From the IMG/VR virus record IMGVR_UViG_3300042308_001511, positions 186,001 to 250,000 of that record: DNA of 64,000 bases; one strand, 5' to 3'. Positions within the stretch are counted from its first letter, which is position 1. Every line of letters starts with the position of its first letter. Shown piece after piece: positions 3,534-42,650 of this stretch. The position numbers and the translations under genes are program-made. The notes below the pieces were generated by a model. It saw only the letters and a list, made by a program, of their open reading frames with translations. It was not told the DNA's origin and did not search any database.

Positions 3534-5453
3534 ATGACTAGATATGAAATTATTGAGAAAATAACTGGTAATAAACCAGTTTGTGTTAAAGAAAGTTATT
3601 TTTCTAAAAATCATAAAGAAATTTATGATAACATTATTGTGCATTATGACCGGTCAATGGTTATAATGCCTATTTTATTTAAAGAAAAAATATGGCTTTG
3701 GGTAAATGAAAAAAAGGATTTACCGAAGTGTCACTGTGGTAATTATACTAAGTTTAGTAGTTGGAAGGATGGTTATAGAAGAAACTGTTCGGTTAAGTGT
3801 TCATCTATTGATCCACTTCGTGTTGAGAATTGTAAAAAATCTGTATATGAAAAATATGGATCTGAAAGTTATTTCAATAGTGATGATTGTAAAAAGAAGA
3901 CAATTGAAAAAAACTTAGAAAAATGGGGAGTCAATCATTATTCTAAGACAGATGAATATAAAGAAAAAATTAGGGAAACTAATAGAAGTAAATGGGGAGT
4001 TGACCATTATTCTAAGACAGATGAATTTAGAGAAAGGGTAAAAGAAACTAATTTAAAGAATTTGGGAGTTGAGAATCCATTCCAATCGGAAGTTATTAAG
4101 GACAAAATACGTGAAGTTAATATATCAAAATGGGGAGTTGATAATTACACAAAGACTGATGAGTATATAGAAAGGGTAAAAGAGACAAACCAGAATAAAT
4201 GGGGTTCTGAATGGTATACACAAACAGAATACTGGAAAGAGAAAACTAAAGAAACTTCATTGAATAAGTGGGGAGTTGATCATTATTCTAAGACGGATGA
4301 TTTTAAGGAAAAGGTTAAACAGACTTCATTGGATAAGTGGGGAGTTACAAGTTACACTAAAACAGATGAGTATAAGAATAAGACTAAGTTAACAAATATA
4401 CAACGTTGGGGTGATGTAAGTCACACACTAAATGAGATATATCGTGTTGAGAATTATGGTGTTGCACAGAATAAAAATTACATAAAACATTTAGGTAATG
4501 GTTACAACTTATTTGGTTGTGATTGTGGATGTACGCATGAGTTTGAGATATTAACCACTACATATATATCAAGATTTACGTCAGGGTCTTCTTTATGTAC
4601 AATTTGTTATCCAGTTGGTAAGACTAAGTCTTTTATGGAACAAGACGTTTTTGATTTCATTAGTTCTAATTATTCTGGTGAAATCGTTTCTGGTTATAGA
4701 GATGGTTTAGAAATTGATATTTATTTGCCTGAGTTGTCATTGGGTTTCGAATTCAATGGACTTTGGTGGCATTCTGATAAAAGACTGGATAAAGATTATC
4801 ATTACAATAAAATGAAGTATTTCAATAATAAGGGTATTAGAATCTTTAGTATATGGGAAGATGATTGGGTTAGTCGAAAAGATATATTGAAATCTCAGAT
4901 TGTAAATATTTTGAATAATACTGATAAAAGAATATTTGCACGTAAGTGTAGTGTTTGTGAAATTTCGGTAGTGGATATTCGTAAATTTTTAGGTGATAAT
5001 CATATACAGGGTTTTGTAAATAGTGTTGTTAAATTGGGTTTATTTTATGATGGTGAGCTTGTTTCTGTAATGTCATTCGATAAATTTGAAGGTCGTAAAA
5101 AGATGAATGGTGATGACTGGAATTTGAATAGATTCTGTAATAAGTTAGACCATATTGTTGTGGGTGGTGCATCTAAATTGTTTAGTTATTTTGTAAATAA
5201 TTGGAAACCGAACAGGGTTATAAGTTATGCTGATCAGGATTGGAGTGTTGGTAATATGTATATTAAGTTAGGTTTTGAAATTGTTTCTGAGGGTAAACCT
5301 GATTATAAATACCTTATTGGTAAAAAGAGAATTCATAAGTCAAAGTTTAGAAAATCTAAATTAGGTTTATCTGAAAGTAAAGAGATGGAAAAAAGAGGTA
5401 TACCAAAGGTCTGGGATTGTGGTAAAATTAAATTAGAAATTAAATTCAATTAG
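3534..5453 (+). CDS. Hef-like homing endonuclease with ~20-aa tandem repeats and Vsr/DUF559-like nuclease motif
   Basis: About 8 KWGVxxYxKTxExKEKxKET repeats; EIDIYLPELSLGFEFNGLWWH nuclease motif; FARKC...NHIQG...GGASKL...SYAD...WDCG C-terminal domain. Confidence 0.75.
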   Translation: MTRYEIIEKITGNKPVCVKESYFSKNHKEIYDNIIVHYDRSMVIMPILFKEKIWLWVNEKKDLPKCHCGNYTKFSSWKDGYRRNCSVKCSSIDPLRVENCKKSVYEKYGSESYFNSDDCKKKTIEKNLEKWGVNHYSKTDEYKEKIRETNRSKWGVDHYSKTDEFRERVKETNLKNLGVENPFQSEVIKDKIREVNISKWGVDNYTKTDEYIERVKETNQNKWGSEWYTQTEYWKEKTKETSLNKWGVDHYSKTDDFKEKVKQTSLDKWGVTSYTKTDEYKNKTKLTNIQRWGDVSHTLNEIYRVENYGVAQNKNYIKHLGNGYNLFGCDCGCTHEFEILTTTYISRFTSGSSLCTICYPVGKTKSFMEQDVFDFISSNYSGEIVSGYRDGLEIDIYLPELSLGFEFNGLWWHSDKRLDKDYHYNKMKYFNNKGIRIFSIWEDDWVSRKDILKSQIVNILNNTDKRIFARKCSVCEISVVDIRKFLGDNHIQGFVNSVVKLGLFYDGELVSVMSFDKFEGRKKMNGDDWNLNRFCNKLDHIVVGGASKLFSYFVNNWKPNRVISYADQDWSVGNMYIKLGFEIVSEGKPDYKYLIGKKRIHKSKFRKSKLGLSESKEMEKRGIPKVWDCGKIKLEIKFN

Positions 5454-9811: not shown

Positions 9812-9842
9812 AAAATCCCACTTCTTAGGTGGGATTTTTTTT
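9812..9842 (+). terminator. Intrinsic terminator
   Basis: AAAATCCCAC-TTCTTAG-GTGGGATTTTTTTT. Confidence 0.8.
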
Positions 9843-9855
9843 GTATCTTAGCGAT

Positions 9856-10275
9856 ATGGATAAACAAAGATTAGAAGAGATGATGCTTAGACTGCAGCTG
9901 GCAGTCAACGAAATCGCAAGAGGTGAAGGAGTAGAGATAAAACTATCTGAGCCAGAACACCTATTCTCGGGTGACAACAACACCTATAAAGTAAGCATGA
10001 CCATTGCAGACGTCGATCCTGTAAAACAGCGTGAGTATGAGGCGATGTGTAAGAAAGTAGGTTTCACACAAAACGTAATCGGTATGTCGTTCACAACTTC
10101 ACACGGATCACTTTACCGAATAGTCAACATAAAGACCAGAAACAGAAAATACCCGGTAATCGCCTCGTCCAGACTGGGTGGACTTTACAAATTCTCTGCG
10201 GAGACCGTTAAGAGACAACTCGGTGGCGACCAGCTTATAAACAGAAACGCTAACTTAGATAAACTAATACCATGA
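9856..10275 (+). CDS. Hypothetical protein with C-terminal tag variant (RNANLDKLIP)
   Basis: Likely start ATG 9856, 4 nt after TATCTTAG; the track's start at 9829 lies inside the terminator. Confidence 0.75.
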   Translation: MDKQRLEEMMLRLQLAVNEIARGEGVEIKLSEPEHLFSGDNNTYKVSMTIADVDPVKQREYEAMCKKVGFTQNVIGMSFTTSHGSLYRIVNIKTRNRKYPVIASSRLGGLYKFSAETVKRQLGGDQLINRNANLDKLIP

Positions 10276-10715
10276 TAATAGCAATAGTAGTACTAGCGCT
10301 GACGACACTCATATTCGGAATTTACATCATACACCTCCACGCCAGACTGTCGGAGGTGATAGCGGACAAAAACAACGCAGAGACGCTCACAGCGACGTTG
10401 AAGAAAAGGACGACCGTCGAGGTATCACCAGGCGACACCGGCCTTATGCCCGGATACAACCTACAACACAACAGGAAGGATGGACCGTATGCGTTCCAGG
10501 TCGACTTCGAGGTCAGCATAATAGAACTATCCGAGAAACGTCTAAAGGTGAGTGCAATTGACTTCACATCCAACGACGCATGGGCGAAGGATCCCACCAA
10601 CAAGCCGGGTATAATAAAATTCTTCCAGAACCAGTGGGTGAACAGGAACGAAGTAGAAATCATCTACGACGATAGAAAACGCAGGAACGACAAACTAAAC
10701 GAATTAGGAATATGA
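10272..10715 (+). CDS. Membrane-anchored hypothetical protein with C-terminal tag (RNDKLNELGI)
   Basis: N-terminal hydrophobic helix; ATGA-coupled at both ends. Confidence 0.75.
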   Translation: MIIAIVVLALTTLIFGIYIIHLHARLSEVIADKNNAETLTATLKKRTTVEVSPGDTGLMPGYNLQHNRKDGPYAFQVDFEVSIIELSEKRLKVSAIDFTSNDAWAKDPTNKPGIIKFFQNQWVNRNEVEIIYDDRKRRNDKLNELGI

Positions 10716-11116
10716 TAACGTTCGAGGAGTTCGCACGCGACATCGGGATGCACCGCGAGGAGGCGATAAAGCGCGAGATACGTGAGATGAAGATAAACAT
10801 ACTCGAGGGTAAGTATATGTGCACCGACGCATACTCTATACCAAAGAATCCAATGATGTGGGAAATGTGTACCGAATGTGGACTGAGACCACTAATCTGG
10901 GAGTTCGACAACGGAAGGGCCACTGCGTGTGGTTGTGGAAAGGACACTTACGAACATCATTCGATACATGCAGAGAGTGTAAGGTCTGTTGTAGAAAGGT
11001 GTGGTGGATCTGCAATGGAATACGATTTAGATGCACTTAGGAATAACTGGAACCAATGGGTAAAAACTGGGAAAGGTGTTATGCACAAAGACCTGAGAGA
11101 CGAAGGAAAATGGTAA
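10712..11116 (+). CDS. Hypothetical protein with CxxC/CxC putative Zn site
   Basis: CTECG...ACGCG; translationally coupled; no C-terminal tag. Confidence 0.75.
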   Translation: MITFEEFARDIGMHREEAIKREIREMKINILEGKYMCTDAYSIPKNPMMWEMCTECGLRPLIWEFDNGRATACGCGKDTYEHHSIHAESVRSVVERCGGSAMEYDLDALRNNWNQWVKTGKGVMHKDLRDEGKW

Positions 11117-11120
11117 TGGA

Positions 11121-11471
11121 ATGAAGACAGACGAATACATACGCGGTGAGATAACCAGACACCTCGACATCCACAAAATAACGTACCGAGAGGCTCAGAT
11201 TGCTGAGATGGTAGAGTCCGTGCTCGGTGGCACTGGTGCGTTCCAAATCATATTCGAACAGGTCTTCGATCCGTTCTGTGAGGACGGAGACGAAATATAC
11301 GTTCTCGAGAAATGTAGAGCACTCGACAGAAGCCTGATCCGTGAAACGACCACACAATTCGGTACTATGTACGCATATGACGGCAAGCGATACCAGTGGT
11401 CCGAAATGGAGACCATACTGATTGACCAGGTGGCATTAAGAGACATCAAGATCAACGAGCTCGGTCTGTAA
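11121..11471 (+). CDS. Hypothetical protein with C-terminal tag (RDIKINELGL)
   Basis: 116-aa ORF in the co-directional array. Confidence 0.75.
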   Translation: MKTDEYIRGEITRHLDIHKITYREAQIAEMVESVLGGTGAFQIIFEQVFDPFCEDGDEIYVLEKCRALDRSLIRETTTQFGTMYAYDGKRYQWSEMETILIDQVALRDIKINELGL

Positions 11472-11519
11472 ACATCCTATACCTAGCTACATATAAAAGT
11501 AAACCAAAAACTTTTACAG

Positions 11520-11735
11520 ATGGCAATCAAAATCACTTGGACAGAGTCCAGCACAACTTACTACCACTACTCCGCCGAGATTACTGAAGAACAGGCAGAT
11601 CTATTCGAGACCGACGAGGCAAAGTTCTTCGACGAAGTAGACTTCCGAAACGATCCAGTTCTCGAATGGGAGGACGTCAAGGACCACGATGCTGAAGACT
11701 TCGAAATCGAAGAAGAAGACGAGGAAGACGAGTAA
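11520..11735 (+). CDS. Small acidic hypothetical protein
   Basis: 71 aa, strongly D/E-rich, A-rich leader. Confidence 0.7.
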   Translation: MAIKITWTESSTTYYHYSAEITEEQADLFETDEAKFFDEVDFRNDPVLEWEDVKDHDAEDFEIEEEDEEDE

Positions 11736-11787
11736 CAAAAAATTAGAAGAGGTCCAAAGTTTGTGCCTTTTTTCGTATATTAGCATT

Positions 11788-12002
11788 ATGTACGAATACC
11801 TAGAACACATAGATAATAACAGATTCAGATTTCGCTGGTCGATGAAGAACGCCAACTTCCTGTGCTGTCAATAGACGAGATTCGTTCTATGATGAAATAC
11901 TACGAGAACATAGAGGCCTACGAGGTCTGTACGTCTATTAATGCCTACATAACCACAATCGAAAGAGATAAAAAACTAGAAGAACTTGGAATAATCGACT
12001 AA
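11788..12002 (+). pseudogene. Frameshifted small tagged gene (…YEVCTSINAYITTIERDKKLEELGIID)
   Basis: ATG 11788 reads MYEYLEHIDNN. The tagged C-terminus lies in another frame (11820-12002). A -1 shift near 11820 joins the two. Confidence 0.5.
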
Positions 12003-12004
12003 GT

Positions 12005-12517
12005 ATGAAAGTAAAAGAAATACTAATAACATTTTTCGGTGCAACCGCTGTACTTTTAGCAATCCTTTTCGGATTGTCCTACTTCGGCAACACTATGTCT
12101 GGCCACATCAACCTTATAATATCGATGTGTGTAGCCACCATAATCGTGGGTATAATGCAGAATGTCGTTCCAGGAATAAGAAAGGTCAAAGCAGAGAAGA
12201 AGGTCAGAACGTTCGTAGAAAATAACTGGCTACCTGGTTTCGAAAAGAAGCACTGGGTGATACGCAACCTCGAAATTATGAATAGAAGAAGCGATCTGTA
12301 CTACGTTATGTTAGACGTCGAGTATCTTCCTCTGGGCAAACGCCATAGTTTCAGTGCAGACGTTAGTTATTCCGATCCTAACTCACACATACACAAAAAC
12401 ATCTCTTACCACCTGAACCGCAAAGAGAAGGAGTGGGCCACTGCAGTGGGAACCGATATGGCAACAATCAGAAAGCAATGGAAAAGAGATAACAGACTAA
12501 ACGAACTAGTGATATGA
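12005..12517 (+). CDS. Two-TM membrane protein with C-terminal tag (RDNRLNELVI)
   Basis: Two N-terminal hydrophobic segments; ATGA overlap with the next gene. Confidence 0.75.
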   Translation: MKVKEILITFFGATAVLLAILFGLSYFGNTMSGHINLIISMCVATIIVGIMQNVVPGIRKVKAEKKVRTFVENNWLPGFEKKHWVIRNLEIMNRRSDLYYVMLDVEYLPLGKRHSFSADVSYSDPNSHIHKNISYHLNRKEKEWATAVGTDMATIRKQWKRDNRLNELVI

Positions 12518-12729
12518 AAGTTATTTGCACACAGGAGACCTACAAACGACACAGAATGGACCTTACGTATGGCAAGGCATACGAAGTCGTCGATGAACAT
12601 CCATTACAAATCAATGACCAAATGTACAAAATAATCGACGACAGAGGAACTTTGGCCTGGTTTGACCGCGAGGTAGTAATACCCCTGGAAGAATGGAGAA
12701 ACAAACAACTAAAAGAACTCGGTATATGA
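12514..12729 (+). CDS. Small SH3-like hypothetical protein with tag (RNKQLKELGI)
   Basis: MKVIC...LTYGKAYEV...YKIIDDRG...WF beta-rich pattern. Confidence 0.75.
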   Translation: MKVICTQETYKRHRMDLTYGKAYEVVDEHPLQINDQMYKIIDDRGTLAWFDREVVIPLEEWRNKQLKELGI

Positions 12730-12974
12730 TGACAATAATCGAAATGTACGGTAGTGAAAAAGTTGCCGGCTCTGGTTACAAGATAACACCAGGTAAGAAA
12801 TACCAGGTAACCGTGTTTCATCAACAGATTTCACCAGACGCCTATCTACAAGAAAAGTTTATATTCACCGACGACTCAGGTGCGAAAGACGAAATAAGCT
12901 ACCTCTGGATCGATAACTGTATGTGTAGTAAAGAAAAATGGAGAGAAACACAAATAAACAAACTCGGAATATGA
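12726..12974 (+). CDS. Small hypothetical protein with tag (RETQINKLGI)
   Basis: Start inferred at the ATGA overlap 12726; ITPGKKYQV...FTDDSG resembles the previous gene. Confidence 0.75.
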   Translation: MMTIIEMYGSEKVAGSGYKITPGKKYQVTVFHQQISPDAYLQEKFIFTDDSGAKDEISYLWIDNCMCSKEKWRETQINKLGI

Positions 12975-13249
12975 TACCAACAATAGGAACACACCTCATC
13001 CGAAGAAACGAAAAGCAATATCTAAATAGTAATGTGGTCGCTGATTGGAGTGGAAAATATATAAAAGGGAAAATAACAGCACTACGAAAATTCCACGAAC
13101 ATGGAGAACTGCACATAGTAATAGAATGGGAAGGTATAGGTCCAGTTCAGTACACCGAAGCGATGTTCTACGAATGTTTACATGAGGGTAAGATAAAGAT
13201 TGACAAACAACATTATAGAAACGAGAAATTTGATCAACTAGGTATATGA
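12971..13249 (+). CDS. Small hypothetical protein with tag (RNEKFDQLGI)
   Basis: Start inferred at the ATGA overlap 12971. Confidence 0.75.
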   Translation: MIPTIGTHLIRRNEKQYLNSNVVADWSGKYIKGKITALRKFHEHGELHIVIEWEGIGPVQYTEAMFYECLHEGKIKIDKQHYRNEKFDQLGI

Positions 13250-13524
13250 AATGGGGAAAAAAATGGAGAAACGGTGAGATGAGGACAATCACCAAGTTCG
13301 CATGGTTGCCGATAAGGATAGATAATAGATGGGAAGGCGCTGAATGGGTCTGGCTCGAGACCGTCAAGATCGAGCAGTGCTATCGAACGAATGTGGGTCT
13401 CAGTAGCACGATGGTGCAAGACTTCAAGGTCTGGTTATTCGGTGGTTACTGGCTCAACGAGAGGTTCGTGCCGAAGACTAAGGACGAGATCAGGAACGAC
13501 AAGCTAGACAAACTGGGAATATAG
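13246..13524 (+). CDS. Small Trp-rich hypothetical protein with tag (RNDKLDKLGI)
   Basis: KFAWLPIRI...WVWLE pattern; ATGA-coupled; ends 1 nt from the glnS stop. Confidence 0.75.
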   Translation: MKWGKKWRNGEMRTITKFAWLPIRIDNRWEGAEWVWLETVKIEQCYRTNVGLSSTMVQDFKVWLFGGYWLNERFVPKTKDEIRNDKLDKLGI

Positions 13525-13525
13525 A

Positions 13526-15130
13526 CTATGCAGTCCAACCCTCTTTTAAACTAACGGTCTTGTTCAACGATCCGTCTTTATCCATAACATAGTAACCCTT
13601 TCTAACCATTTGAACCGGTGTTCCTGGAACACATTCCGTAACACATGGTTCGAATACCGCACTCATATTAACTTTCTTAGACTCCGAGTTCAAATAATAA
13701 AGTATATCACCTTCTTCTTTATCGGGAAATTGAGACGTGAAAAGTTTATCATACTCATTTGTCTTTACATTTATTCCGTGTTCTGTGGATACCCAGTGTA
13801 TTGTTCCTTTTACTTTCCTATCAACCTTCATTCCGGAACGAGTCATTGGATCATATTCACATAATATATGTGTTATATTACCCACATCATCCTTTACAAC
13901 CGAATTAGCTTTTATTATGTAAGCCCCCTTAAGTCTTACCTCACCACCTATCTTAAGTCTGTGAAACTTTCCACCCGCTTCTTCTTTGAAGTCTTCACGC
14001 TCTATATACAACTCACCTGAAAATGGAATCATCCTCTTACCAAATGATTCATCTTCTGGATTGTTTTCTACCTCAACATATTCAGTACCTCCTGACCAGT
14101 TCTCAATCACCAATTTCACCGGATCAAAAACACCCATCACTCTTTTAGCAGATTTGTTTAACTCAACCCTGAGACACTCCTCTAACAATGAATAAGAAAC
14201 TACTGACTCTCTTTTAGTAACCGAAATCTTTTCACAAAACTCTCTTATCGATGCTGGTGTGAAACCCCTTCTTCTCAATCCAGATATAGTAGGCATCCTT
14301 GGATCGTCCCAATCATCAACGTGACCTTCATCCACCAACCTTTTCAATTTTCTTTTAGACATAACCGTCCAGTCAATGTTTAGTCTAGCAAACTCTGTTT
14401 CTTCTGGAAGTGTACCCGATAAATCACAATTTTCAAGAACCCACATATAAAGAGGTCTATGTACCTCAAATTCAAGTGTACAAAGTGAATCTGTTATACC
14501 CTCAGTATAATCTGATAATGGATGTGCAAAATCATACATAGGGTATATTTTCCATTTGTCACCTGTTTTATGATGTGGTCTATCCACAATTCTGTATATC
14601 ACTGGATCCCTCAATATCATATTTGATGATGTCATATCGATATTAGCTCGTAGTGTCTTCGAACCCTCCGGGAATTCTCCATTCCTCATCCTGTTGAAAA
14701 GATCTAAGTTTTCTTCTCGACTTCTACTTTTATATGGTGAATCCTTTCCAGGTAATGTTGGTGTGCCCTTCATTTCTGCCATTTCTTCTGATGTGGAATC
14801 ATCTACATAAGCCAATCCTTTGTTTATCAAAGTCTGTGCACAACCATAAATGAAATCAAAGTAATCTGATGTACAAGCGATAACATTTGGTTCGTAACCA
14901 AGCCACCTAACATCTTCTGTTATAGAGTTTACATATTCCTCTTCCTCAGTACTCGGATTTGTATCATCGAATCGCAAATTGCATTTAGCACCATACTTCT
15001 CGGCCAATCCAAAATTTAGACAGATTGATTTTGCATGCCCTATATGTAAGTATCCGTTTGGTTCTGGTGGAAACCTAAGTGCCAAATTATCAATTCCTTT
15101 TTTCAATATCTTTTCCTCTATGAAGTTCAT
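13526..15130 (-). CDS. glnS: Glutaminyl-tRNA synthetase
   Basis: RFPPEPNGYLHIGH (HIGH), RFDDTNP, YPMYDFAH, SLCTLEF, VMSKR (KMSKS-like), VKGTIHWVS. Start likely at ATG 15130 (MNFIEEK). Confidence 0.95.
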   Translation of the reverse strand: MNFIEEKILKKGIDNLALRFPPEPNGYLHIGHAKSICLNFGLAEKYGAKCNLRFDDTNPSTEEEEYVNSITEDVRWLGYEPNVIACTSDYFDFIYGCAQTLINKGLAYVDDSTSEEMAEMKGTPTLPGKDSPYKSRSREENLDLFNRMRNGEFPEGSKTLRANIDMTSSNMILRDPVIYRIVDRPHHKTGDKWKIYPMYDFAHPLSDYTEGITDSLCTLEFEVHRPLYMWVLENCDLSGTLPEETEFARLNIDWTVMSKRKLKRLVDEGHVDDWDDPRMPTISGLRRRGFTPASIREFCEKISVTKRESVVSYSLLEECLRVELNKSAKRVMGVFDPVKLVIENWSGGTEYVEVENNPEDESFGKRMIPFSGELYIEREDFKEEAGGKFHRLKIGGEVRLKGAYIIKANSVVKDDVGNITHILCEYDPMTRSGMKVDRKVKGTIHWVSTEHGINVKTNEYDKLFTSQFPDKEEGDILYYLNSESKKVNMSAVFEPCVTECVPGTPVQMVRKGYYVMDKDGSLNKTVSLKEGWTA

Positions 15131-15262
15131 TATTAGATTTTTTAATTTCTTTATTTTATATGAAAAAAATGAAAAGTTAAAATATTTTTGTATATTGGTA
15201 AGATAGAGATTAGTGAGCAACACCGTGAGAAACTAAATCTACTCGGAATAATATAAAAAAGG

Positions 15263-15844
15263 ATGAAAGAGATTAGAGACATAAAGATTGATTTACTCAC
15301 TGGAAATAAAAATCCAATCGTAGAACTATTCAACGAAATCACAAAGGACACAATGATAATCAAATGTGATGTCTACCATAAACACGGAATAGAATTCATC
15401 TACCACAATGGTGGCGAGTGGATCTTCTACCAGGATTGCCAAAATGGCGAGTTCTGGTGCAACTACACGAGATATTGGTCGCTTTTCGAATCCAATCTGA
15501 AACTCGAATACCAGGAAATACAAGCGATAACAAAGTACCTGGTGGAAGAAGCACTCAAACGAGAGGTGAGCACACCTCGTGAGGCATTGGAGTCTTTCAA
15601 AGGAGTGGTGGAAGAAGCACTCAAACGAGAGGTGAGCACACCCATAATGAATAATGTAGTTCAGTACTTCGCGGTGGAAGAGGTGCTCAAACGAGAGGTG
15701 AGCACACCAAAATCTCATCTACATAATTCAGCAACGGTGGTGGAAAAAGCACTCAAACGAGAGGTAGGATCAGTTGAATTTGTTGTTTTCACCCCTCCAC
15801 CGGTGGAAGAGTCACTCAAAAGAGAGATAAACCAAACCGAATAA
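15263..15844 (+). CDS. Hypothetical protein with C-terminal conserved-repeat/variable-insert array
   Basis: ~93-aa unique N-terminal domain, then five VEEALKREV units separated by unrelated 9-10-aa segments. Confidence 0.8.
   Translation: MKEIRDIKIDLLTGNKNPIVELFNEITKDTMIIKCDVYHKHGIEFIYHNGGEWIFYQDCQNGEFWCNYTRYWSLFESNLKLEYQEIQAITKYLVEEALKREVSTPREALESFKGVVEEALKREVSTPIMNNVVQYFAVEEVLKREVSTPKSHLHNSATVVEKALKREVGSVEFVVFTPPPVEESLKREINQTE
15541..15837 (+). repeat. CRISPR-like array inside a coding frame: 36-nt repeats, 30-nt spacers
   Basis: GGTGGAAGAAGCACTCAAACGAGAGGTGAGCACACC at 15541 and 15607 (identical), 15673 (3 mismatches), degenerate copies at 15739 and 15802. Spacers are 30, 30, 30 and 27 nt and mutually unrelated. 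Confidence 0.9.
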
Positions 15845-15847
15845 CCA

Positions 15848-16108
15848 ATGGAACTCGACCACATAATACTCGAAAGGATCTGCCTACGAAAATACAACAT
15901 AGACGCAGACCAACCAGCACTCATAAACCTCAGAGACTGGCAAACCACAATACACGACGACACCTGGCATACCGAATGCTTCTTCTCGGTTGGATCAGGC
16001 CCAAGATGGTTCGGCCAAGATAGCCTGGTAGTATACCAAGATGAATACATACGAGAACTTACCACCATACGAAGAGAAGAGAAACTTAATCAACTCGGCA
16101 TCAAATGA
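15848..16108 (+). CDS. Small hypothetical protein with tag (REEKLNQLGIK)
   Basis: 86-aa ORF; ATGA-coupled to the next gene. Confidence 0.7.
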   Translation: MELDHIILERICLRKYNIDADQPALINLRDWQTTIHDDTWHTECFFSVGSGPRWFGQDSLVVYQDEYIRELTTIRREEKLNQLGIK

Positions 16109-16356
16109 TAAACAAAGACATCGCGGTAGAGATAGCACACAACGAATACCACAAGAAGTACAACGACACAGAGGGAACCGTTCTCTCTACTATGTATGTC
16201 AATCAAATGGTTGATGTTGATTACGTCGTAGTAAGTCTACTAGCTCGTAAAGAAGGCGACGACCTGAAAGTCTTCACAATAGACATACCGATGTGGTACT
16301 ACAACGCAGAAGTCCAAAATAAAAGAGATTGCAAAATAGACGAGATATTGGAATGA
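16105..16356 (+). CDS. Small hypothetical protein with tag variant (RDCKIDEILE)
   Basis: 83-aa ORF; coupled at both ends. Confidence 0.7.
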   Translation: MINKDIAVEIAHNEYHKKYNDTEGTVLSTMYVNQMVDVDYVVVSLLARKEGDDLKVFTIDIPMWYYNAEVQNKRDCKIDEILE

Positions 16357-16595
16357 CCAAAGACCAAGAGAAAATCATAAGAGATTGGTTTGAAACCATA
16401 AAGAAAAACCTTCCCGCAGGTGCCGAGATATCCAGCATCAGAGAACACCGGGACGGAAAAACAACCATCGTCTACGAATACGGAAAACACGAGAACACAT
16501 ACAGAGACGGAAAGAGACACGGTCAAATAGAAGTCACCAAAGACCACATAACACAAATAAACCGAGAAAACAAACTAAGAGAACTGGGACTCTAA
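16353..16595 (+). CDS. Small hypothetical protein with tag (RENKLRELGL)
   Basis: Start inferred at the ATGA overlap 16353. Confidence 0.7.
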   Translation: MTKDQEKIIRDWFETIKKNLPAGAEISSIREHRDGKTTIVYEYGKHENTYRDGKRHGQIEVTKDHITQINRENKLRELGL

Positions 16596-17281
16596 TCCTC
16601 ATCCGTGCGTATCCACCTGACGTCCTGCCTCACCTCCAAATGAACGCCCGGGAACTCTTCCGCGACCCTGTCTTTCACAGCCTGGGCGACCTCGTCAGGT
16701 ATCCTTTCCTGGAAGGCGTTTATCGAGTCGCTTCGCATGTGGAACGTCACCAAATACCCGATGCCGTAACTTGAGAAATTCGTCTTCAACCTATTCATGT
16801 TCCTCCTGAAGTCGCGGACCCAGTCGTCTTGAGTACTGCCCTCCTCCATCACACACATAAACACCGTCGGTAGTGAGGCGTGACTGGAAAAGTAACTTTT
16901 ACCTGCTCTGTGATTCCAGACCGCTGCCTGTATCCTGACCTGGTAGCCACTGTCGGTGAGGTCCTCCGCGACAAGCACATCCGACAGGTAGTCGATGAGA
17001 GACATATCGACCCGGCCTGCGAAGTACTCCTCGGCCGAGACCATCGCCGCGTCGACCCTCGCCCGGTCCTCCGCGCTCATCTCCTGCCTGAACGACCAGT
17101 CGGTATCGTCCCAATGACATTCATCCTCCCAACTAACCGAACCATCCGCCAACAATGGCCAAAGATTACCCGTCTCGGTTCCTAACGCAGAACCAACACT
17201 ATCCAAATTAACAATCGGCTCATCCGGAACACCATCCGCTTGTCCCTCTAAGAAGACCTTATACACTTTTAACTTTCTCAT
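16592..17281 (-). CDS. Hypothetical protein, visibly GC-rich
   Basis: 229-aa ORF convergent with the tagged array; composition differs from its flanks. Confidence 0.7.
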   Translation of the reverse strand: MRKLKVYKVFLEGQADGVPDEPIVNLDSVGSALGTETGNLWPLLADGSVSWEDECHWDDTDWSFRQEMSAEDRARVDAAMVSAEEYFAGRVDMSLIDYLSDVLVAEDLTDSGYQVRIQAAVWNHRAGKSYFSSHASLPTVFMCVMEEGSTQDDWVRDFRRNMNRLKTNFSSYGIGYLVTFHMRSDSINAFQERIPDEVAQAVKDRVAEEFPGVHLEVRQDVRWIRTDED

Positions 17282-17373
17282 ACAAAATATATGTATTTAA
17301 TCCATCTCATAAACTATATATAACGAAATTTATATATTATATATAAAAACTCTATAAAAAATAAAAAAAAACT

Positions 17374-18039
17374 ATGTCATACTTAGATAGCGCAAGAAGA
17401 TTCAAAAATTTTGAACCGAGTTGGGACTATAAAAAACAACTTCAATACGTTTCTGAAACACATGATTGGGGCGATGAAGAAATGCAAAAATTACTATTTT
17501 TGGATATTCAAAAAAAAATTAGTAATTCAACGCCATCATTTATTGAATTGGGTTCGGGTGGAACAGACTCATCTGTTTATTCACTATTATTTGAAAAATA
17601 TCACAATTATGAATGTACAATTATTAATACAGAACCAAGGAAAGAATTACTGGATTTGATTAAAAGTGAATGGATGCCAAATCATTTAAAAAATGCCATC
17701 TTATATCATGGTTATAATGGAAGCGGTAACGGCTTAGATAATAAAGAAATTATTCCTAAATTGAAAATTTCTGATATTATGAAAGAATGTAATTTGGAGA
17801 AAGTGGATATTTTACATATGGATATACAGGGTGATGAAGTTGTCGTTTTAGAAGAAATGGAATATGATAATACTATCAGAAAAATTCGTTTTTTCTTTAT
17901 ATCAACTCATAGTCTAAGTATTCATGAGAAATGTTTGGAAATTATAAATAGAAATCTTAAAACACTTTACTATTTTTCGGATCCATATTCTGGTGGGTAT
18001 GGTGATGGACTAATAGTTTTTGAAAACTTAGATTTTTGA
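17374..18039 (+). CDS. FkbM-like SAM-dependent methyltransferase
   Basis: FIELGS (motif I) and VDILHMDIQGDE, FkbM-like. Confidence 0.7.
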   Translation: MSYLDSARRFKNFEPSWDYKKQLQYVSETHDWGDEEMQKLLFLDIQKKISNSTPSFIELGSGGTDSSVYSLLFEKYHNYECTIINTEPRKELLDLIKSEWMPNHLKNAILYHGYNGSGNGLDNKEIIPKLKISDIMKECNLEKVDILHMDIQGDEVVVLEEMEYDNTIRKIRFFFISTHSLSIHEKCLEIINRNLKTLYYFSDPYSGGYGDGLIVFENLDF

Positions 18040-18302
18040 TAAAAGATACTCTTTCAACATTCTCCACTTAATTCACGTTCTATATTGGATGTAATATTTG
18101 TAGAAATAAATTATCTACAATCTCATTATATTGATTTGGTTTTCAAAAACTATATAAATTACTCGACACGGTTTCCAATATTAATTTTTTCATACCGTAC
18201 AAACACAACCCAAAACCGACTGTATAAAAAGAAACTAAATCTAAAACAATAGAATAGATCTCTGGAAATCCAAAATGAACTAAGGTTTTATTTATAATTT
18301 AT

Positions 18303-18330
18303 AAAACCACTCACATTGAGTGGTTTTTTT
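18303..18330. terminator. Intrinsic terminator
   Basis: AAAACCACTCA-CAT-TGAGTGGTTTTTTT. Confidence 0.8.
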
Positions 18331-18356
18331 GTTTATATTTGTCTAAAATAAAAGAT

Positions 18357-19217
18357 ATGGCAGACTATAGTAGAGATAAATTGTTCGAACAACTGGATCA
18401 GTTGAAAATTTACAAATCGGGTGAAAGTGTAATCACTGAGTTTAGAGGTCGTGTTATAAACAACACTGATGTATCGTCTAAATATGAAATTTTTGACATT
18501 GTTAAGTATTTCAAAGAAAGAATTGATGAGATTGAAAAGTCTTTCAAAATTGATAAATACTTTCTTACAATCAAAGGTGGTAAACAAACACTCGACCTTG
18601 TATCTGAGGAGGTTGAAGTTGCTGGAAAGAAATTTCAAAAGACTTTCCATATGCAAAACTCAACCGATAGATCGCGTAGATTAGGTTTCAATACTGGTCT
18701 CTATAACGTAGAGGATAAATATGTTGTGATTAGTGCGGTAAATCAGGTTTCTTTGTATAAGGCACACATTAAGGGTGTAACACAGGCGGCAGAGGAAGCC
18801 AGTAAGGGTATCTCTGGTGAGACGTTTGATGATCAAATCAGTGCATTGAACGATTTGGTTGGTCATAGAGTCGCTTTCTCAAAAATACGAGGTGTTATAC
18901 TGGGTGATGATGAGAAAGTACCACAGATTGCACATAAACGTTTCGATAATTTCGTAGCTTCTCTGAAATCTGCTAGTCGTTCAGGAATAACAAAGGAGGA
19001 CTACACAAAGTATAATATACCGAGACAAAGATCAGAGTATGTGAAGGAGATAAAGTTTGACGAAGACTTCTTCATTGACGGATTCGACACAATAATGTGT
19101 TATTTGAGAGCATTTGGTGGGCAGGAGACACACATCATCAAAAATGAGTCTGAGCGAATTATGAAAATTACCCAATGGTCGGTTAGGAATGATATGTTAG
19201 CGATGCTTGGAATATAA
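18357..19217 (+). CDS. Hypothetical protein (weakly DUF932-like) with tag variant (RNDMLAMLGI)
   Basis: Start likely ATG 18357 after TATATTTG at 18334; NSTDRS resembles the NSxDGS motif of DUF932. Confidence 0.7.
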   Translation: MADYSRDKLFEQLDQLKIYKSGESVITEFRGRVINNTDVSSKYEIFDIVKYFKERIDEIEKSFKIDKYFLTIKGGKQTLDLVSEEVEVAGKKFQKTFHMQNSTDRSRRLGFNTGLYNVEDKYVVISAVNQVSLYKAHIKGVTQAAEEASKGISGETFDDQISALNDLVGHRVAFSKIRGVILGDDEKVPQIAHKRFDNFVASLKSASRSGITKEDYTKYNIPRQRSEYVKEIKFDEDFFIDGFDTIMCYLRAFGGQETHIIKNESERIMKITQWSVRNDMLAMLGI

Positions 19218-19247
19218 ACAAATAAATCTCTCATAAGTATAAAACTT

Positions 19248-20000
19248 ATGAGAGATTATCTTTTAAAGAGGCTTGAATGCTTCAACGACCCAGATTTCAT
19301 ATTCAATCCAGGTCTTCACCGATATACTTACCACGGTGATGTTTTTCAATCGGTTACTACATTAGTTGGTACGTTCCACAAACCATTCGAAACTGAAAAG
19401 ATGTCCAAAAAGAAGGCAGATGAAACTGGATTCGACCAAGAGTGGATAAAGGCCGAGTGGGTTGAAACTAATCGTTATGCGAATGAGGTTGGAACTGCTA
19501 CACATGAATGGATCGAGAATTATTTTTCTGAAATTTGGCAACCATTACCAACCAATCCGGACATCATACACCGAATAAACAAATTCAACAAAATTTTCGC
19601 AAAACAATTGTATAAGTTGGAACCTTTGGCTTTCGAGGTTAGGGTTTTCTCTAAAAAGTGGAAGAAGGCAGGTACAATCGATGCACTCTTTGTTAAAGAT
19701 GGTAAGATTTTTATACTTGACTACAAAACCAATAAAAAGTTTACCGATGATGATCATAAAGATGGTAGGTATCAGAAGTTACTATGGCCATTTGATTCTT
19801 TCTATAAAAACCATCACAATGAGTATTCAATACAATTATCGATTTATGCTGCTATACTCGAAGAGTGGGGCTTTGATGTGGCGGGTGCATACCTTGTCTA
19901 TATAGGACCTGGAGATGAGGAGGCGGAGTTAATAAAGGTGAAGGATATGAGACCTTATATAAATGAGTATTTCGAGAGTCAAAATTTTCTCGGAGAATAA
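19248..20000 (+). CDS. PD-(D/E)XK exonuclease (RecB/Cas4-like)
   Basis: SVTT, GTATHEWIE, AGTIDALF, ILDYKT, QLSIY motifs. No four-Cys Fe-S signature seen. Confidence 0.85.
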   Translation: MRDYLLKRLECFNDPDFIFNPGLHRYTYHGDVFQSVTTLVGTFHKPFETEKMSKKKADETGFDQEWIKAEWVETNRYANEVGTATHEWIENYFSEIWQPLPTNPDIIHRINKFNKIFAKQLYKLEPLAFEVRVFSKKWKKAGTIDALFVKDGKIFILDYKTNKKFTDDDHKDGRYQKLLWPFDSFYKNHHNEYSIQLSIYAAILEEWGFDVAGAYLVYIGPGDEEAELIKVKDMRPYINEYFESQNFLGE

Positions 20001-23765: not shown

Positions 23766-24239
23766 ATGTCAGAATATTTAGAAAAAGTCGCCGAGTTTCA
23801 CAAAACATTTGGTGCGCCTATACTCGCTACACCTCAAATACCATCTGAGGAAAGATGTAAATTGAGAGTTAACCTTCTACAGGAAGAGTTGAACGAGTTA
23901 TCCGATGCTATAAAGGCAGGTGATATCGTAGAGATTGCAGATGCACTCGCAGATTTGCAATATGTTCTATCAGGTGCAGTTTTAGAGTTTGGTTTGAAAG
24001 ATAGGTTTGATCCACTTTTCGATGAAGTACAAAGATCAAATATGAGTAAAGCATGTTCTACTCAACAAGAGGCAATAGAGACTCTTTTACACTATAAACA
24101 AAAGGATGGTACGGAAGGAACATATCAACAAATTGGTGATGTTTATGTTGTGAATAGGAACGGAGACAACAAAGTATTAAAGTCTGTGGCCTATTCACCT
24201 GCAAATCTAAAACCAATAATTTATGAAGAGTCCGTATAG
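23766..24239 (+). CDS. MazG-like NTP pyrophosphohydrolase (PRA-PH/DR2231-like)
   Basis: VAEFHKTFG, LLQEELNEL, IADALADLQYV, FDEVQRSNMSK. Confidence 0.88.
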   Translation: MSEYLEKVAEFHKTFGAPILATPQIPSEERCKLRVNLLQEELNELSDAIKAGDIVEIADALADLQYVLSGAVLEFGLKDRFDPLFDEVQRSNMSKACSTQQEAIETLLHYKQKDGTEGTYQQIGDVYVVNRNGDNKVLKSVAYSPANLKPIIYEESV

Positions 24240-24558
24240 TAAAGCCTTACTAGAAAAATTAATGTTGATATACGGTGAAAAAGTAATTAATTTATATACG
24301 GTAAAGATTGATAAAATGGTATCTGAATTAGAGTCGGGATTCGTAGGACCATACATTTATAAAATTGAATGGGGTGGTGGTAAACCTGTTGAAATAAAGC
24401 CTATATTCTGTGACGAATTCATAAAATCCGGTATGGACACTTGGGTCGCACTTAGAGAAGGTAAGTACATATCTTCACATTCTTTTCACCAGTTCATAGA
24501 TTGTAGATCTGAAATACACCGTGAAAGACAACTGAACGAATTACTCGAGAATGAATAA
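24223..24558 (+). CDS. Hypothetical protein with tag variant (RERQLNELLENE)
   Basis: 111-aa ORF overlapping its neighbours. Confidence 0.7.
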   Translation: MKSPYSKALLEKLMLIYGEKVINLYTVKIDKMVSELESGFVGPYIYKIEWGGGKPVEIKPIFCDEFIKSGMDTWVALREGKYISSHSFHQFIDCRSEIHRERQLNELLENE

Positions 24559-24808
24559 GAATTCTTATTACGACATACTGATGACGGAGGTAACGGTTAG
24601 TGTTGCCTACCGTGTATTCGGTCTGGAAAGATTCGATGAAGGACAGAGAGTTTTTCTACATAGTCATCCCAGGATTACAAGATGGTTCTGCTTCGATCGT
24701 GATTATATTTTATACACACCTAGTGAATATGAACGTATGAAATACTTCATTGATGAGACAGAGTGGAGAGATGAAAGAATAGATACAATACTAAAAAAGA
24801 AAGAATGA
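24551..24808 (+). CDS. Hypothetical protein with tag variant (WRDERIDTIL)
   Basis: 85-aa ORF. Confidence 0.7.
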   Translation: MNKNSYYDILMTEVTVSVAYRVFGLERFDEGQRVFLHSHPRITRWFCFDRDYILYTPSEYERMKYFIDETEWRDERIDTILKKKE

Positions 24809-42374: not shown

Positions 42375-42650
42375 ATGAAACCGGATATTGGATCCGTTTA
42401 TGTGTGTGTTAATAGTGACACAAATGGGCGATTAGGTCCAAAGGGTCTTAAAGTTGGTGAATTATTTTTAATAAATCGTGTCATTGAGATGTACGATGTA
42501 GATAATTACGATGATGGATATAGATATGCTATCTTTATAAATAATATAGATTCTAAATCTGAATCTATATTCTACATAAAAGATTTTTTAAGGTGTTTCG
42601 TATCTATAGAGGATTGGAGAGAATCTCGATTAAAAGGATTAGAATTGTAG
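42375..42650 (+). CDS. Small hypothetical protein with tag variant (WRESRLKGLEL)
   Basis: 91-aa ORF; isolated copy of the tag. Confidence 0.7.
   Translation: MKPDIGSVYVCVNSDTNGRLGPKGLKVGELFLINRVIEMYDVDNYDDGYRYAIFINNIDSKSESIFYIKDFLRCFVSIEDWRESRLKGLEL

What the first reader, a model, noticed from the sequence alone, without database searches (positions are those of the whole stretch)
9856..19217. A shared C-terminal peptide tag on about 16 unrelated small proteins
Seen: C-termini RNANLDKLIP (9856), RNDKLNELGI (10272), RDIKINELGL (11121), RDKKLEELGIID (12002 end), RDNRLNELVI (12005), RNKQLKELGI (12514), RETQINKLGI (12726), RNEKFDQLGI (12971), RNDKLDKLGI (13246), REEKLNQLGIK (15848), RDCKIDEILE (16105), RENKLRELGL (16353), RNDMLAMLGI (18357), and outliers at 24223, 24551 and 42375. 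The bodies differ (membrane, SH3-like, Trp-rich) and the tag codons vary synonymously, so selection acts on the peptide. Inference: an amphipathic-helix address label that docks many accessory proteins onto one hub (a host or phage complex, a compartment or the virion) or acts as a degron, possibly for the phage ClpP.
Basis: partly seen in the sequence, partly recalled or inferred. Interest (0 to 1): 0.8.

Follow-up and report, generated by a model that had tools for sequence, protein, structure and literature searches.

The report
Shared C-terminal tag on phage proteins
Dozens of otherwise unrelated, mostly small proteins of a group of giant bacterial viruses all end in the same ten-residue peptide (R-x-x-K-L-x-E-L-G-I), which selection keeps intact at the protein level and which most likely serves as an address label for one still unidentified common partner.

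Summary
In the window, 11 ORFs end in R-x-x-[KQR]-[LIF]-x-x-L-[GV]-[ILV]. All are on the + strand and 0-2 residues from the stop. There are also one orphan tag and five weaker variants. The window is part of a 344-kb IMG/VR contig related to the 634-642-kb 'Mahaphage' genomes, whose predicted hosts are Bacteroidetes. The same tag occurs on 421 ORFs in about 125 contigs from lake, groundwater and marine metagenomes, and about 54 times in the complete 642-kb genome LR756502.1. It occurs in 596 Gb of cellular genomes only at the level expected by chance. With the tag removed, the bodies fall into 148 BLAST clusters, including SH3-like barrels, membrane anchors, an ACP-like domain and a conserved 292-aa protein. 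Between orthologues, the Leu and Gly codons of the tag differ often, and almost always synonymously, so selection acts on the peptide. Structure models show a terminal helix ending in a Gly cap. I found no description of it in Pfam, NCBIfam, PHROGs or the literature. The best reading is a strictly C-terminal docking motif for one cytoplasmic receptor. A degron or Clp-protease handle is the main rival. The receptor is unknown.

The parts
9856..10275 (+). Gene with a weak tag variant, RNANLDKLIP (tag codons 10243-10272). Orthologues end RNANL[DNE]KL[LI]GND.
10272..10715 (+). 147-aa protein with an N-terminal membrane anchor. Tag RNDKLNELGI at 10683-10712. The stop overlaps the next start (ATGA).
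11121..11471 (+). 116-aa protein. Tag RDIKINELGL at 11439-11468.
11862..12002 (+). 46-aa protein. Tag RDKKLEELGI at 11964-11993, followed by two extra residues (ID).
12005..12517 (+). 170-aa protein with two transmembrane segments. Tag RDNRLNELVI at 12485-12514. The tag is predicted to be cytoplasmic by the positive-inside rule.
12514..12729 (+). 71-aa SH3-like barrel with a C-terminal helix. Tag RNKQLKELGI at 12697-12726. It belongs to the largest body cluster (95 members).
12726..12974 (+). Small protein (the start could also be 12693). Tag RETQINKLGI at 12942-12971.
12971..13249 (+). Small protein (the start could also be 12938). Tag RNEKFDQLGI at 13217-13246.
13246..13524 (+). 92-aa Trp-rich protein. 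Tag RNDKLDKLGI at 13492-13521. It is the last gene of the first array.
15221..15253 (+). Orphan tag HREKLNLLGII* in a 27-aa ORF, next to the minus-strand GlnRS gene. It is probably the remnant of a truncated tagged gene.
15848..16108 (+). 86-aa protein. Tag REEKLNQLGI at 16073-16102, followed by one extra residue (K).
16105..16356 (+). 83-aa protein with a weak variant, RDCKIDEILE (16324-16353).
16353..16595 (+). Small protein (the start could also be 16329). Tag RENKLRELGL at 16563-16592.
18339..19217 (+). Conserved 292-aa protein, possibly DUF932-like. Tag RNDMLAMLGI at 19185-19214. All 120 listed homologues end VRNxxLExLGI or a close variant.
24223..24555 (+). Outlier with a weak variant, RERQLNELLENE.
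24551..24805 (+). Outlier with a weak variant, RDERIDTILKKKE.
42375..42647 (+). Outlier with a weak variant, RESRLKGLEL, on an SH3-like-looking 91-aa protein.

Best explanation
The tag is a short linear docking motif: a terminal helix (R-[EDN]-x-K-L-x-E-L) closed by a Gly cap, followed by a last hydrophobic residue with a free carboxylate. Huge phages of the Mahaphage group append it to many fast-evolving accessory proteins, which are encoded in translationally coupled arrays, and to at least one conserved 292-aa protein. All tagged proteins are thereby recognised in the cytoplasm by one common receptor with a pocket for a C-terminal peptide. What is shown: the motif exists, it is strictly terminal, it is modular, it is selected at the peptide level, it is restricted to viruses, and it is predicted to be a helix. 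What is inferred: that a single receptor exists, that the tag acts in the cytoplasm, and that docking rather than destruction is the purpose. The receptor's identity is unknown.
For: Position: 405 of 448 PSSM hits in 125 loci end exactly at the stop and 437 lie within 3 residues. In the complete genome LR756502.1, 54 of 61 hits are terminal, against 0-2 hits in shuffles. This fits recognition of the free C-terminus.
Modularity: the bodies form 148 BLAST clusters, 87 of them singletons. The folds differ: an SH3-like barrel, a 292-aa alpha/beta protein, membrane anchors and an ACP-like domain. The tagged proteins tested have almost no Pfam, PHROGs or NCBIfam match.
Selection: between orthologues with 25-85% body identity, the codons of L5, L8 and G9 differ in 52%, 69% and 40% of pairs, and 92-98% of those differences are synonymous. 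Ile is kept with ATA, ATT or ATC when there is no ATGA overlap. The six core positions stay about 88-97% identical while bodies fall to 20-40% identity. Untagged genes in the arrays stay untagged in orthologues.
Structure: the tag is the end of a helix. Confidence is low (pLDDT below 50) in the 292-aa model, as expected for a tail that orders on a partner.
Conserved family: the 292-aa family carries a tag-like terminal helix far beyond this clade, with endings such as ..RNEKISELFA..RNNKIDQILNSI and ..RETxRILxxI. This looks like an old interaction helix rather than a disposable degron.
Distribution: the DNA pattern hit at least 120 metagenome loci against 4 in 596 Gb of cellular genomes, which is about the level expected by chance.
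Topology: by the positive-inside rule, both membrane-anchored members in the window place the tag in the cytoplasm.
Against: No receptor was found, and co-folding could not be run. No linker separates tag and body in the two models, unlike many targeting peptides. A non-degradative hub that binds about 50 different partners per genome is not obvious. The test for covariation of 'dialects' was negative or uninformative: the 21-kb locus encoding the ..ELFA-tailed homologue (L145) holds no small-gene array, and an ELFA-pattern scan of IMG/VR gave only single, chance-like hits. Heterogeneity of the variable tag positions between loci is significant but modest, and is confounded by relatedness. The tags were collected with a motif model, so their conservation statistics are partly affected by ascertainment.
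Confidence: 0.45

Rival explanations
1. The tag is a degron or protease handle. It delivers tagged proteins to an AAA+ protease (host ClpXP/ClpAP or Lon, or the phage ClpP-like protein), so that a whole class of early or accessory proteins is removed on schedule. Alternatively it docks them directly onto the ClpP ring.
For: The tag is strictly C-terminal with a non-polar ending, hydrophobic-Gly-hydrophobic-COOH. From established knowledge: non-polar C-termini and ssrA (..LAA) or MuA (..RRKKAI) tails are ClpX degrons; Clp ATPases dock onto ClpP through [ILV]-G-[FL] loops; and the HslU and proteasomal HbYX tails dock through their free C-termini. The phage encodes a ClpP-like protein with the GLAASMG serine motif at 57347-58093. 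It is conserved in LR756502.1 (43%) and LR745206.1 (71%).
Against: The resemblance is only of pattern, and no known degron matches. The tag is modelled as part of a helix directly abutting the fold. R1 and K4, ten and seven residues from the end, are as conserved as the terminal residues. A conserved core-like 292-aa protein keeps a similar helix, with different last residues, over large distances. The same ClpP-like gene is found in Lak phages, for which no tag was shown, and PHROGs also labels it a head maturation protease.
Confidence: 0.25
2. The tag is a virion-loading signal. It anchors cargo proteins to the inside of the HK97-type capsid or to a scaffold, so that they are packaged and injected with the DNA, in the way cargo-loading peptides work in encapsulins.
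For: The analogy comes from established knowledge: encapsulin cargo proteins of unrelated folds share a short C-terminal peptide that binds the inner face of an HK97-fold shell. Huge capsids package many proteins, and injected anti-defence proteins are known (T4 IPI, P1 Dar). About 54 tagged proteins per genome would fit an 'effector' set.
Against: About 8% of tagged proteins are membrane-anchored. The tagged arrays sit among DNA-metabolism and methylase genes, not in the structural module. The tagged 292-aa protein lies next to a PD-(D/E)XK exonuclease. The sequence does not match encapsulin peptides, and there is no linker.
Confidence: 0.08
3. The tag has an intrinsic role and no external receptor. 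It could be a helix-capping or stabilising element, or a self-association helix through which tagged proteins form homo- or hetero-oligomers. For example, they might co-assemble with the 292-aa protein that carries the same helix.
For: L-x-x-L-G-hydrophobic is a common helix C-cap pattern, and the same string occurs inside an MGS-like domain at 39282. The 292-aa family has the helix as a native feature.
Against: A generic cap would not need an invariant Arg, the Lys or the exact terminal position. It would also not be confined to one virus group or absent from neighbouring genes in the arrays.
Confidence: 0.1
4. The conservation is a signal at the nucleic-acid level, or a relic. It could be a translational-coupling or initiation region for the next gene, or a recombination site or remnant of cassette shuffling, with the peptide a by-product.
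For: 301 of 421 tags end ATA TGA with the next ATG overlapping. The arrays are mobile: the array at 9.8-18.3 kb is missing at the syntenic site of LR756502.1 and has a different GC content. Orphan tags exist.
Against: Third codon positions carry little information, and Leu uses both TTA and CTN codons. Differences at the conserved residues are almost all synonymous. The peptide is equally conserved in the 29% of tags with no overlapping start. DNA identity is too low for homologous recombination.
Confidence: 0.04

Closest known systems
Encapsulin cargo-loading (targeting) peptides
   Same: A short, conserved C-terminal peptide shared by unrelated proteins. It binds one receptor surface, which is an HK97-fold shell, the fold of phage capsids.
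   Different: The consensus differs and a flexible linker normally precedes it. There are only a few cargos per locus, not about 50. Here the genes are not next to a shell gene, and some members are membrane proteins.
ssrA tag with the SspB/ClpX system, and other C-terminal ClpX degrons (MuA)
   Same: A peptide of about 10-11 residues at the very C-terminus with a non-polar end. In ssrA the upstream part binds an adaptor and the last residues bind the unfoldase. A ClpP-like gene is present in the phage.
   Different: ssrA is added during translation by tmRNA, whereas this tag is encoded in each gene. There is no sequence similarity, and the tag is helical and contiguous with the fold. Degradation is untested.
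Poxvirus PRANC/F-box-like C-terminal domain on ankyrin proteins
   Same: A virus equips many variable binding proteins with one common C-terminal module that plugs them into a single cellular machine.
   Different: PRANC is a folded domain of about 30-50 residues on one repeat family in a eukaryotic virus. Here the module is a 10-residue motif on unrelated folds in phages.
C-terminal translocation signals of Dot/Icm and other type IV secretion effectors
   Same: Tens to hundreds of unrelated effectors share a loosely defined C-terminal signal read by one receptor.
   Different: Those signals are degenerate and defined by composition. This tag is a sharp motif with six nearly invariant positions, and no secretion apparatus is implicated.
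Hub-binding tails: beta-clamp-binding motif (QL[SD]LF; Pol IV ..QLVLGL-COOH), SSB C-terminal tail, PDZ class II ligands (hydrophobic-x-hydrophobic-COOH)
   Same: Short terminal peptides that dock many different proteins on one hub. The ..L-G-I-COOH ending fits the class II PDZ pattern and recalls the Pol IV tail.
   Different: The Leu spacing differs from clamp motifs (L-x-x-L-G-I against L-x-L-G-L). No polymerase-sized protein carries the tag: the largest tagged ORF has 305 aa. No PDZ or clamp partner was identified.

Membership tests
Simple paralogous protein family | Full-length sequence similarity among members | tested here: not met
   384 bodies with the tag removed fall into 148 blastp clusters (E<1e-3), of which 87 are singletons. 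The folds differ.
C-terminal short linear motif / targeting peptide (generic) | Fixed position at the C-terminus, on unrelated proteins, conserved beyond the flanking sequence | tested here: met
   405 of 448 hits end at the stop. The six core positions stay 88-97% identical while bodies are 20-100% identical. The conserved codons differ almost only synonymously.
C-terminal short linear motif / targeting peptide (generic) | A cognate receptor that binds the peptide | not testable with these tools
   No multimer prediction or binding assay was available, and no candidate was identified.
ClpX-type C-terminal degron (ssrA/MuA-like) | Exposed, unstructured tail with a recognised terminal sequence (..LAA, ..KKAI) | tested here: not met
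   The consensus is R-[ED]-x-K-L-[NK]-E-L-G-I. The tag is modelled as a helix contiguous with the fold.
ClpX-type C-terminal degron (ssrA/MuA-like) | Tag-dependent degradation by an AAA+ protease | not testable with these tools
   This needs an experiment. Only the presence of a ClpP-like gene is shown.
Encapsulin cargo-loading peptide | Consensus around G-S-L / L-x-I-G-S-L after a flexible linker, with the gene adjacent to an encapsulin shell gene | tested here: not met
   The consensus differs. There is no linker in the models. The neighbours are methylases, GlnRS and an exonuclease.
Beta-clamp-binding motif | QL[SD]LF or QLxLxL, present on polymerases and repair enzymes | tested here: not met
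   The spacing is L-x-x-L-G-I. No tagged ORF exceeds 305 aa among the 421 ORFs plus the 54 tags of the complete genome.
T4-type capsid targeting sequence | N-terminal peptide removed by the prohead protease | tested here: not met
   The motif is C-terminal in every case.
Membrane-targeting amphipathic helix (MinD/FtsA type) | Strongly amphipathic, hydrophobic-rich and basic terminal helix | tested here: not met
   Only 3 of 10 consensus residues are hydrophobic, and two positions are acidic. This was judged from the sequence; no hydrophobic moment was computed.
DUF932 (PF06067), for the 292-aa tagged protein only | Match to the Pfam model above its threshold | tested here: not met
   The ESM Atlas neighbours are DUF932 clusters (score 0.97). 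However, none of 45 family members hits PF06067 even at E<=0.1. This remains a lead only.

The most novel reading that the evidence does not exclude
Huge phages of the Mahaphage group run their own protein-addressing system. A genetically encoded ten-residue C-terminal 'postcode' sits on about 8% of their proteins (a rough estimate). A dedicated, phage-encoded receptor reads it and gathers dozens of accessory or host-takeover proteins at one site, such as a replication factory, a membrane platform or a proteolytic chamber. This would be comparable in logic to PTS1/Pex5 or to effector sorting in secretion systems, and has not been described in bacterial viruses.
Probability: 0.3. Interest if true: 0.9.

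Novelty: new variant of a known kind. Interest (0 to 1): 0.8.

Why it matters
Most genes of huge phages are small ORFans with no handle for study. A shared, sharply defined tag identifies a functional class of about 50 proteins per genome at once. It predicts a single receptor that can be fished out with one peptide, and it gives a sequence rule for finding such proteins in metagenomes, where hundreds are already visible. If the receptor is a protease, the tag would be a virus-encoded timing device. If it is a hub or a compartment, the tag would be the first proteome-scale addressing code in a phage. Either way it could serve as a portable tag for work in Bacteroidota.

Tried and rejected
1. 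Database names: Pfam, PHROGs and NCBIfam scans of 10 window proteins and 47 cluster representatives found nothing except one ACP-like domain.
2. Literature: full-text searches for the peptide string, for shared C-terminal motifs in (jumbo or huge) phages and for DUF932 found nothing relevant. The Nature 2020 huge-phage paper does not contain the word 'C-terminal'.
3. Megablast of the region against GenBank phages gave no match.
4. Fold search of the 292-aa model found nothing significant. The Rad52 hits at E of about 0.2 and TM of about 0.1 were rejected as noise.
5. ESM Atlas searches with a 92-aa tagged protein and with the last 24 residues of another were uninformative.
6. 'Dialect covariation': I looked for small proteins ending ..ELFA around relatives of the 292-aa protein that end that way and in IMG/VR. 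No arrays were found, so the test was uninformative.
7. Lineage assignment: PHROGs scans of ten large ORFs from five tag-bearing contigs that lack homology to LR756502.1 found no hallmark genes.
8. Explanations at the DNA level (recombination site, initiation region) were rejected on codon evidence.
9. The sigma-70 promoter scan of the array was no better than shuffles.


Full report
OBSERVATION. A regular expression for R-x-x-[KQRM]-[LIFM]-x-x-[LIM]-[GVL]-[ILV] matches 11 times in the six-frame translation of the whole 64-kb window. All 11 matches are on the + strand and 0-2 residues from a stop codon. A position-specific score built from them separates these 11 (24-32 bits) from everything else (15 bits or less). 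Twenty shuffled windows gave only 0-9 hits at or above the 8-bit cut-off. Five further genes carry a looser version with the same R-x-x-[KRQN]-[LI]-x-x-[LI] skeleton and another ending: 9856, 16105, 24223, 24551 and 42375. One tag, HREKLNLLGII*, stands alone in a 27-aa ORF beside the minus-strand glutaminyl-tRNA synthetase gene.

WHERE THE WINDOW COMES FROM. The window is part of IMGVR_UViG_3300042308_001511, a 344-kb viral contig. It encodes a C5 DNA methyltransferase-like ORF (recognised from its sequence motifs; not scanned against a family library), GlnRS, a homing endonuclease, a PD-(D/E)XK exonuclease, a baseplate wedge protein, a ClpP-like protein, an M50 peptidase, and folate and sugar-nucleotide enzymes. 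About 45 of its proteins have 25-75% identical counterparts in LR756502.1, in largely conserved order. Its ClpP-like protein is 71% identical to that of LR745206.1 and 41% identical to those of the Prevotella Lak megaphages. LR756502.1 (642,428 bp) and LR745206.1 (634,780 bp) match the 642-kb and 634-kb complete genomes of the Mahaphage clade. The authors predicted that clade to replicate in Bacteroidetes (PMC7162821). That the accessions are those genomes is my inference from their lengths.

THE TAG IS WIDESPREAD AND VIRUS-SPECIFIC. A back-translated DNA pattern found the tag in two other IMG/VR contigs, of 171 kb and 29 kb, and in further clusters of the same 344-kb contig. Three consecutive small ORFs of the 171-kb contig end ..RDEKLNELGI..RDNKLNELGI and ..RERKLNELGI. 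The known 80 kb of the window's own genome already hold at least 26 strong tags. Their record names point to lakes, groundwater and sea water, including GOS, TARA and Trout Bog. Over the 125 loci (705 kb), the score found 448 hits of at least 16 bits. Of these, 405 end exactly at the stop codon and 437 lie within three residues, and 124 of the 125 loci hold at least one terminal tag. The 421 tagged ORFs have a median length of 86 aa and a maximum of 305. The consensus is R(100%)-[E47 D31 N12]-x-K(82%)-L(92%)-[N47 K30]-E(60%)-L(93%)-G(97%)-I(90%)-COOH. Collection with a motif score inflates these percentages somewhat. The same DNA pattern hit only four places in 596 Gb of bacterial and archaeal genomes. 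My estimate from the information content of the pattern is about 5 chance hits there. Two of the four lie in ORFs of 11 and 19 aa. One is a 3.5-kb contig with four tags binned into a MAG, which is probably a phage fragment.

AN UNBIASED GENOME-WIDE COUNT. I read the complete 642-kb genome LR756502.1 in 13 pieces. It has 61 hits of at least 12 bits, and 54 of them are within two residues of a stop. Three shuffled genomes gave 0-2 hits. At roughly one gene per kb, this would be about 8% of the genes; that figure is a rough inference. The tags are strongly clustered at 4-20 kb on the + strand and 585-640 kb on the - strand. These are the two sides of the minimum of cumulative GC skew at coordinate 0, and the genes are transcribed away from it. 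A 40-kb stretch of the more distant 462-kb genome LR756500.1 has no tag, and its homologue of the 292-aa protein ends ..ETNRILNIITI.

THE BODIES ARE UNRELATED. With the tag removed, 384 complete bodies fall into 148 single-linkage BLAST clusters at E<1e-3. The largest has 95 members and 87 are singletons. The eleven window proteins fall into ten clusters. The 71-aa protein 12514-12729 is modelled with mean pLDDT 84 as a small beta-barrel followed by a helix at residues 58-68, which is the tag. The barrel resembles SH3 domains (Foldseek probability up to 0.98, TM about 0.5). The 292-aa protein is an alpha/beta protein whose last helix (264-289) runs into the tag; pLDDT is below 50 for residues 284-292. 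Thirty-one of 380 tagged proteins have a predicted membrane segment. In the two window examples, the positive charges follow the last membrane segment, which places the tag in the cytoplasm; this is inferred from the positive-inside rule. Ten window proteins (eight with a strong tag, one with a weak variant) gave no significant Pfam match and a single PHROG of unknown function. Of 47 large cluster representatives, only one matched a Pfam or NCBIfam family. That one is an ACP-like domain in which the usual Ser is replaced, reading GIDELD.

SELECTION ACTS ON THE PEPTIDE. I used the 284 tags that could not have been picked up by the DNA pattern. Among them, third codon positions carry far less information than first and second positions, and Leu is written with TTA as well as CTN. 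Ile is ATA when the stop is TGA, but ATA, ATT or ATC when the stop is TAA or TAG. In about 300 orthologue pairs with 25-85% body identity, the codons of L5, L8 and G9 differ in 52%, 69% and 40% of pairs. The difference is synonymous in 49, 61 and 39 percentage points and non-synonymous in only 4, 8 and 1. In the ten codons upstream, non-synonymous changes dominate. Orthologues with 20-40% identical bodies still share about 88% of the six core positions. Untagged genes inside the arrays (the acidic 71-aa protein, the repeat protein at 15263 and the Cys-rich 134-aa protein) are untagged in their orthologues too. The homologues of the 71-aa protein keep the tag, though a few end ..RLNEIL.

GENE ORGANISATION. 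301 of 421 tags end ATA TGA with the ATG of the next gene overlapping. The tagged genes therefore form translationally coupled arrays. The remaining 29% keep the peptide without such an overlap. The window array at 9.8-13.5 kb has 43% GC and GC3 up to 0.68, against 35.5% GC for the window and GC3 of about 0.27-0.37 in the flanking core genes. Strong hairpins bracket it, and it is missing at the syntenic position of LR756502.1, where homologues of its genes lie elsewhere. Together with the orphan tags, this shows that the arrays are mobile and turn over quickly.

A CONSERVED PROTEIN WITH THE SAME TAIL. The 292-aa protein has more than 300 relatives, on contigs of up to 598 kb. All 120 listed end in VRN-x-x-L-E-x-L-G-I or a close variant. 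A profile search of 1.84 billion representative proteins shows that more distant members end ..VRNEKISELFA..IRNNKIDQILNSI or ..IRKEKLSSILSL, and still more distant ones end ..RETxRILxxI. A terminal helix of the type R-x-x-[KR]-[LI]-x-x-[LI]-hydrophobic is therefore old in this family, and ..LGI is the form used in the tag-bearing clade. The weak variants in the window look like the intermediate forms. The function of the protein is unknown. Language-model neighbours are DUF932 clusters, but the Pfam model does not match, and there is no significant structural match. It lies next to a PD-(D/E)XK exonuclease.

INTERPRETATION. The data show a strictly terminal peptide that is transferable between folds and actively conserved. 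That is the signature of a short linear motif read by something else. The near-absolute requirement to be the last residues suggests that the free carboxylate is part of what is read, as with PDZ, TPR, ClpX or proteasome-type pockets (established knowledge). The conservation of Arg1 and Lys4 suggests a binding surface of about three helical turns rather than only the last three residues. I therefore favour docking to one cytoplasmic receptor (confidence 0.45).

The main rival is a degradation or Clp handle (0.25). The ending, hydrophobic-Gly-hydrophobic, recalls both non-polar C-terminal degrons and the [ILV]-G-[FL] loops with which Clp ATPases dock on ClpP, and the phage has a ClpP-like gene. 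This is resemblance only. The deep conservation of a similar helix with other endings in the 292-aa family argues somewhat against a pure degron. Virion loading (0.08) is disfavoured by the membrane-anchored members and by the genomic neighbourhood. An intrinsic capping or oligomerisation role (0.10) does not explain the invariant Arg and the terminal position. Explanations at the nucleic-acid level (0.04) are contradicted by the codon data.

KNOWN OR NEW. No Pfam, PHROGs or NCBIfam model describes the tag, and the full-text searches returned nothing. The paper describing the related genomes does not mention it. The logic of one terminal peptide on many unrelated proteins is known from encapsulin cargo peptides, microcompartment encapsulation peptides, ssrA, the poxvirus PRANC domain and effector secretion signals. 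I therefore rate it a new variant of a known kind, while noting that nothing comparable in scale has, to my knowledge, been reported for a phage.

LIMITS. The receptor is not identified. The timing of expression is unknown. The host is inferred only from relatedness to Mahaphage genomes. About half of the tag-bearing contigs could not be linked to LR756502.1 or the window by a shared large ORF, so restriction to a single lineage is not proven. The conservation figures for the tag are inflated by the way the tags were collected, although the synonymous-versus-non-synonymous contrast is not.

Noticed in passing
window 13526-15223 (-) and 15221-15253 (+): A complete glutaminyl-tRNA synthetase gene (68% identical to that of LR756502.1) sits between two tagged arrays. 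Beside its 5' end is an orphan tag in a 27-aa ORF, as if the insertion or a deletion had truncated a tagged gene.
   Followed up: partly
window 15263-15844 (+): A 193-aa untagged protein contains about five tandem copies of a 'VEEALKREVSTP'-like unit. Homologues in five other loci are also untagged and differ in their C-terminal parts.
   Followed up: partly
window 16592-17281 (-): An ORF of 229 aa has 54% GC in a 35.5% GC window. It has no family match and looks like a recent foreign acquisition.
   Followed up: no
window 9829-13524: The tagged array has 43% GC and GC3 up to 0.68, against about 0.27-0.37 in flanking core genes. It is absent from the syntenic site of LR756502.1, so the array looks laterally acquired.
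   Followed up: partly
window 9812-9838, 18303-18327, 19225-19257: Strong, partly bidirectional hairpins followed by T-runs bracket the array and the 292-aa gene. They are likely terminators.
   Followed up: no
window 57347-58093 (-) and 60305-60907 (-): There is a ClpP-like protein with a GLAASMG serine motif and an N-terminal extension of about 45 residues. It is shared with Mahaphage and Lak genomes, and PHROGs also labels it a head maturation protease. An M50-family peptidase lies 2 kb away.
   Followed up: partly
window 39222-40907 (+): An unusual fusion joins an MGS-like/AICARFT-type N-terminal domain to a classical AAA ATPase domain. It contains an internal tag-like string, VVSKLNELGI, at 39282, which is probably an ordinary helix-to-strand junction.
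   Followed up: no
window 3534-5453 (+): A large homing-endonuclease-like gene (DUF7487, HNH PHROGs) is 45% identical to one in LR756502.1, where it lies at a non-syntenic position.
   Followed up: no
L107:393-755 (-): A tagged acyl-carrier-protein-like domain has the phosphopantetheine-attachment Ser replaced, reading GIDELD instead of G-x-D-S-L-D.
   Followed up: no
LR756502.1 (L131-L143), 4-20 kb and 585-640 kb: Most tagged genes of the complete 642-kb genome lie on both sides of the minimum of cumulative GC skew. This point is the putative replication origin and the start of the record. The genes are transcribed away from it.
   Followed up: partly
L129 (CAYVOK010000113.1, 3.5 kb): A contig binned into an Acidimicrobiaceae MAG carries four tagged ORFs. 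It is probably a mis-binned phage fragment rather than evidence about the host.
   Followed up: no
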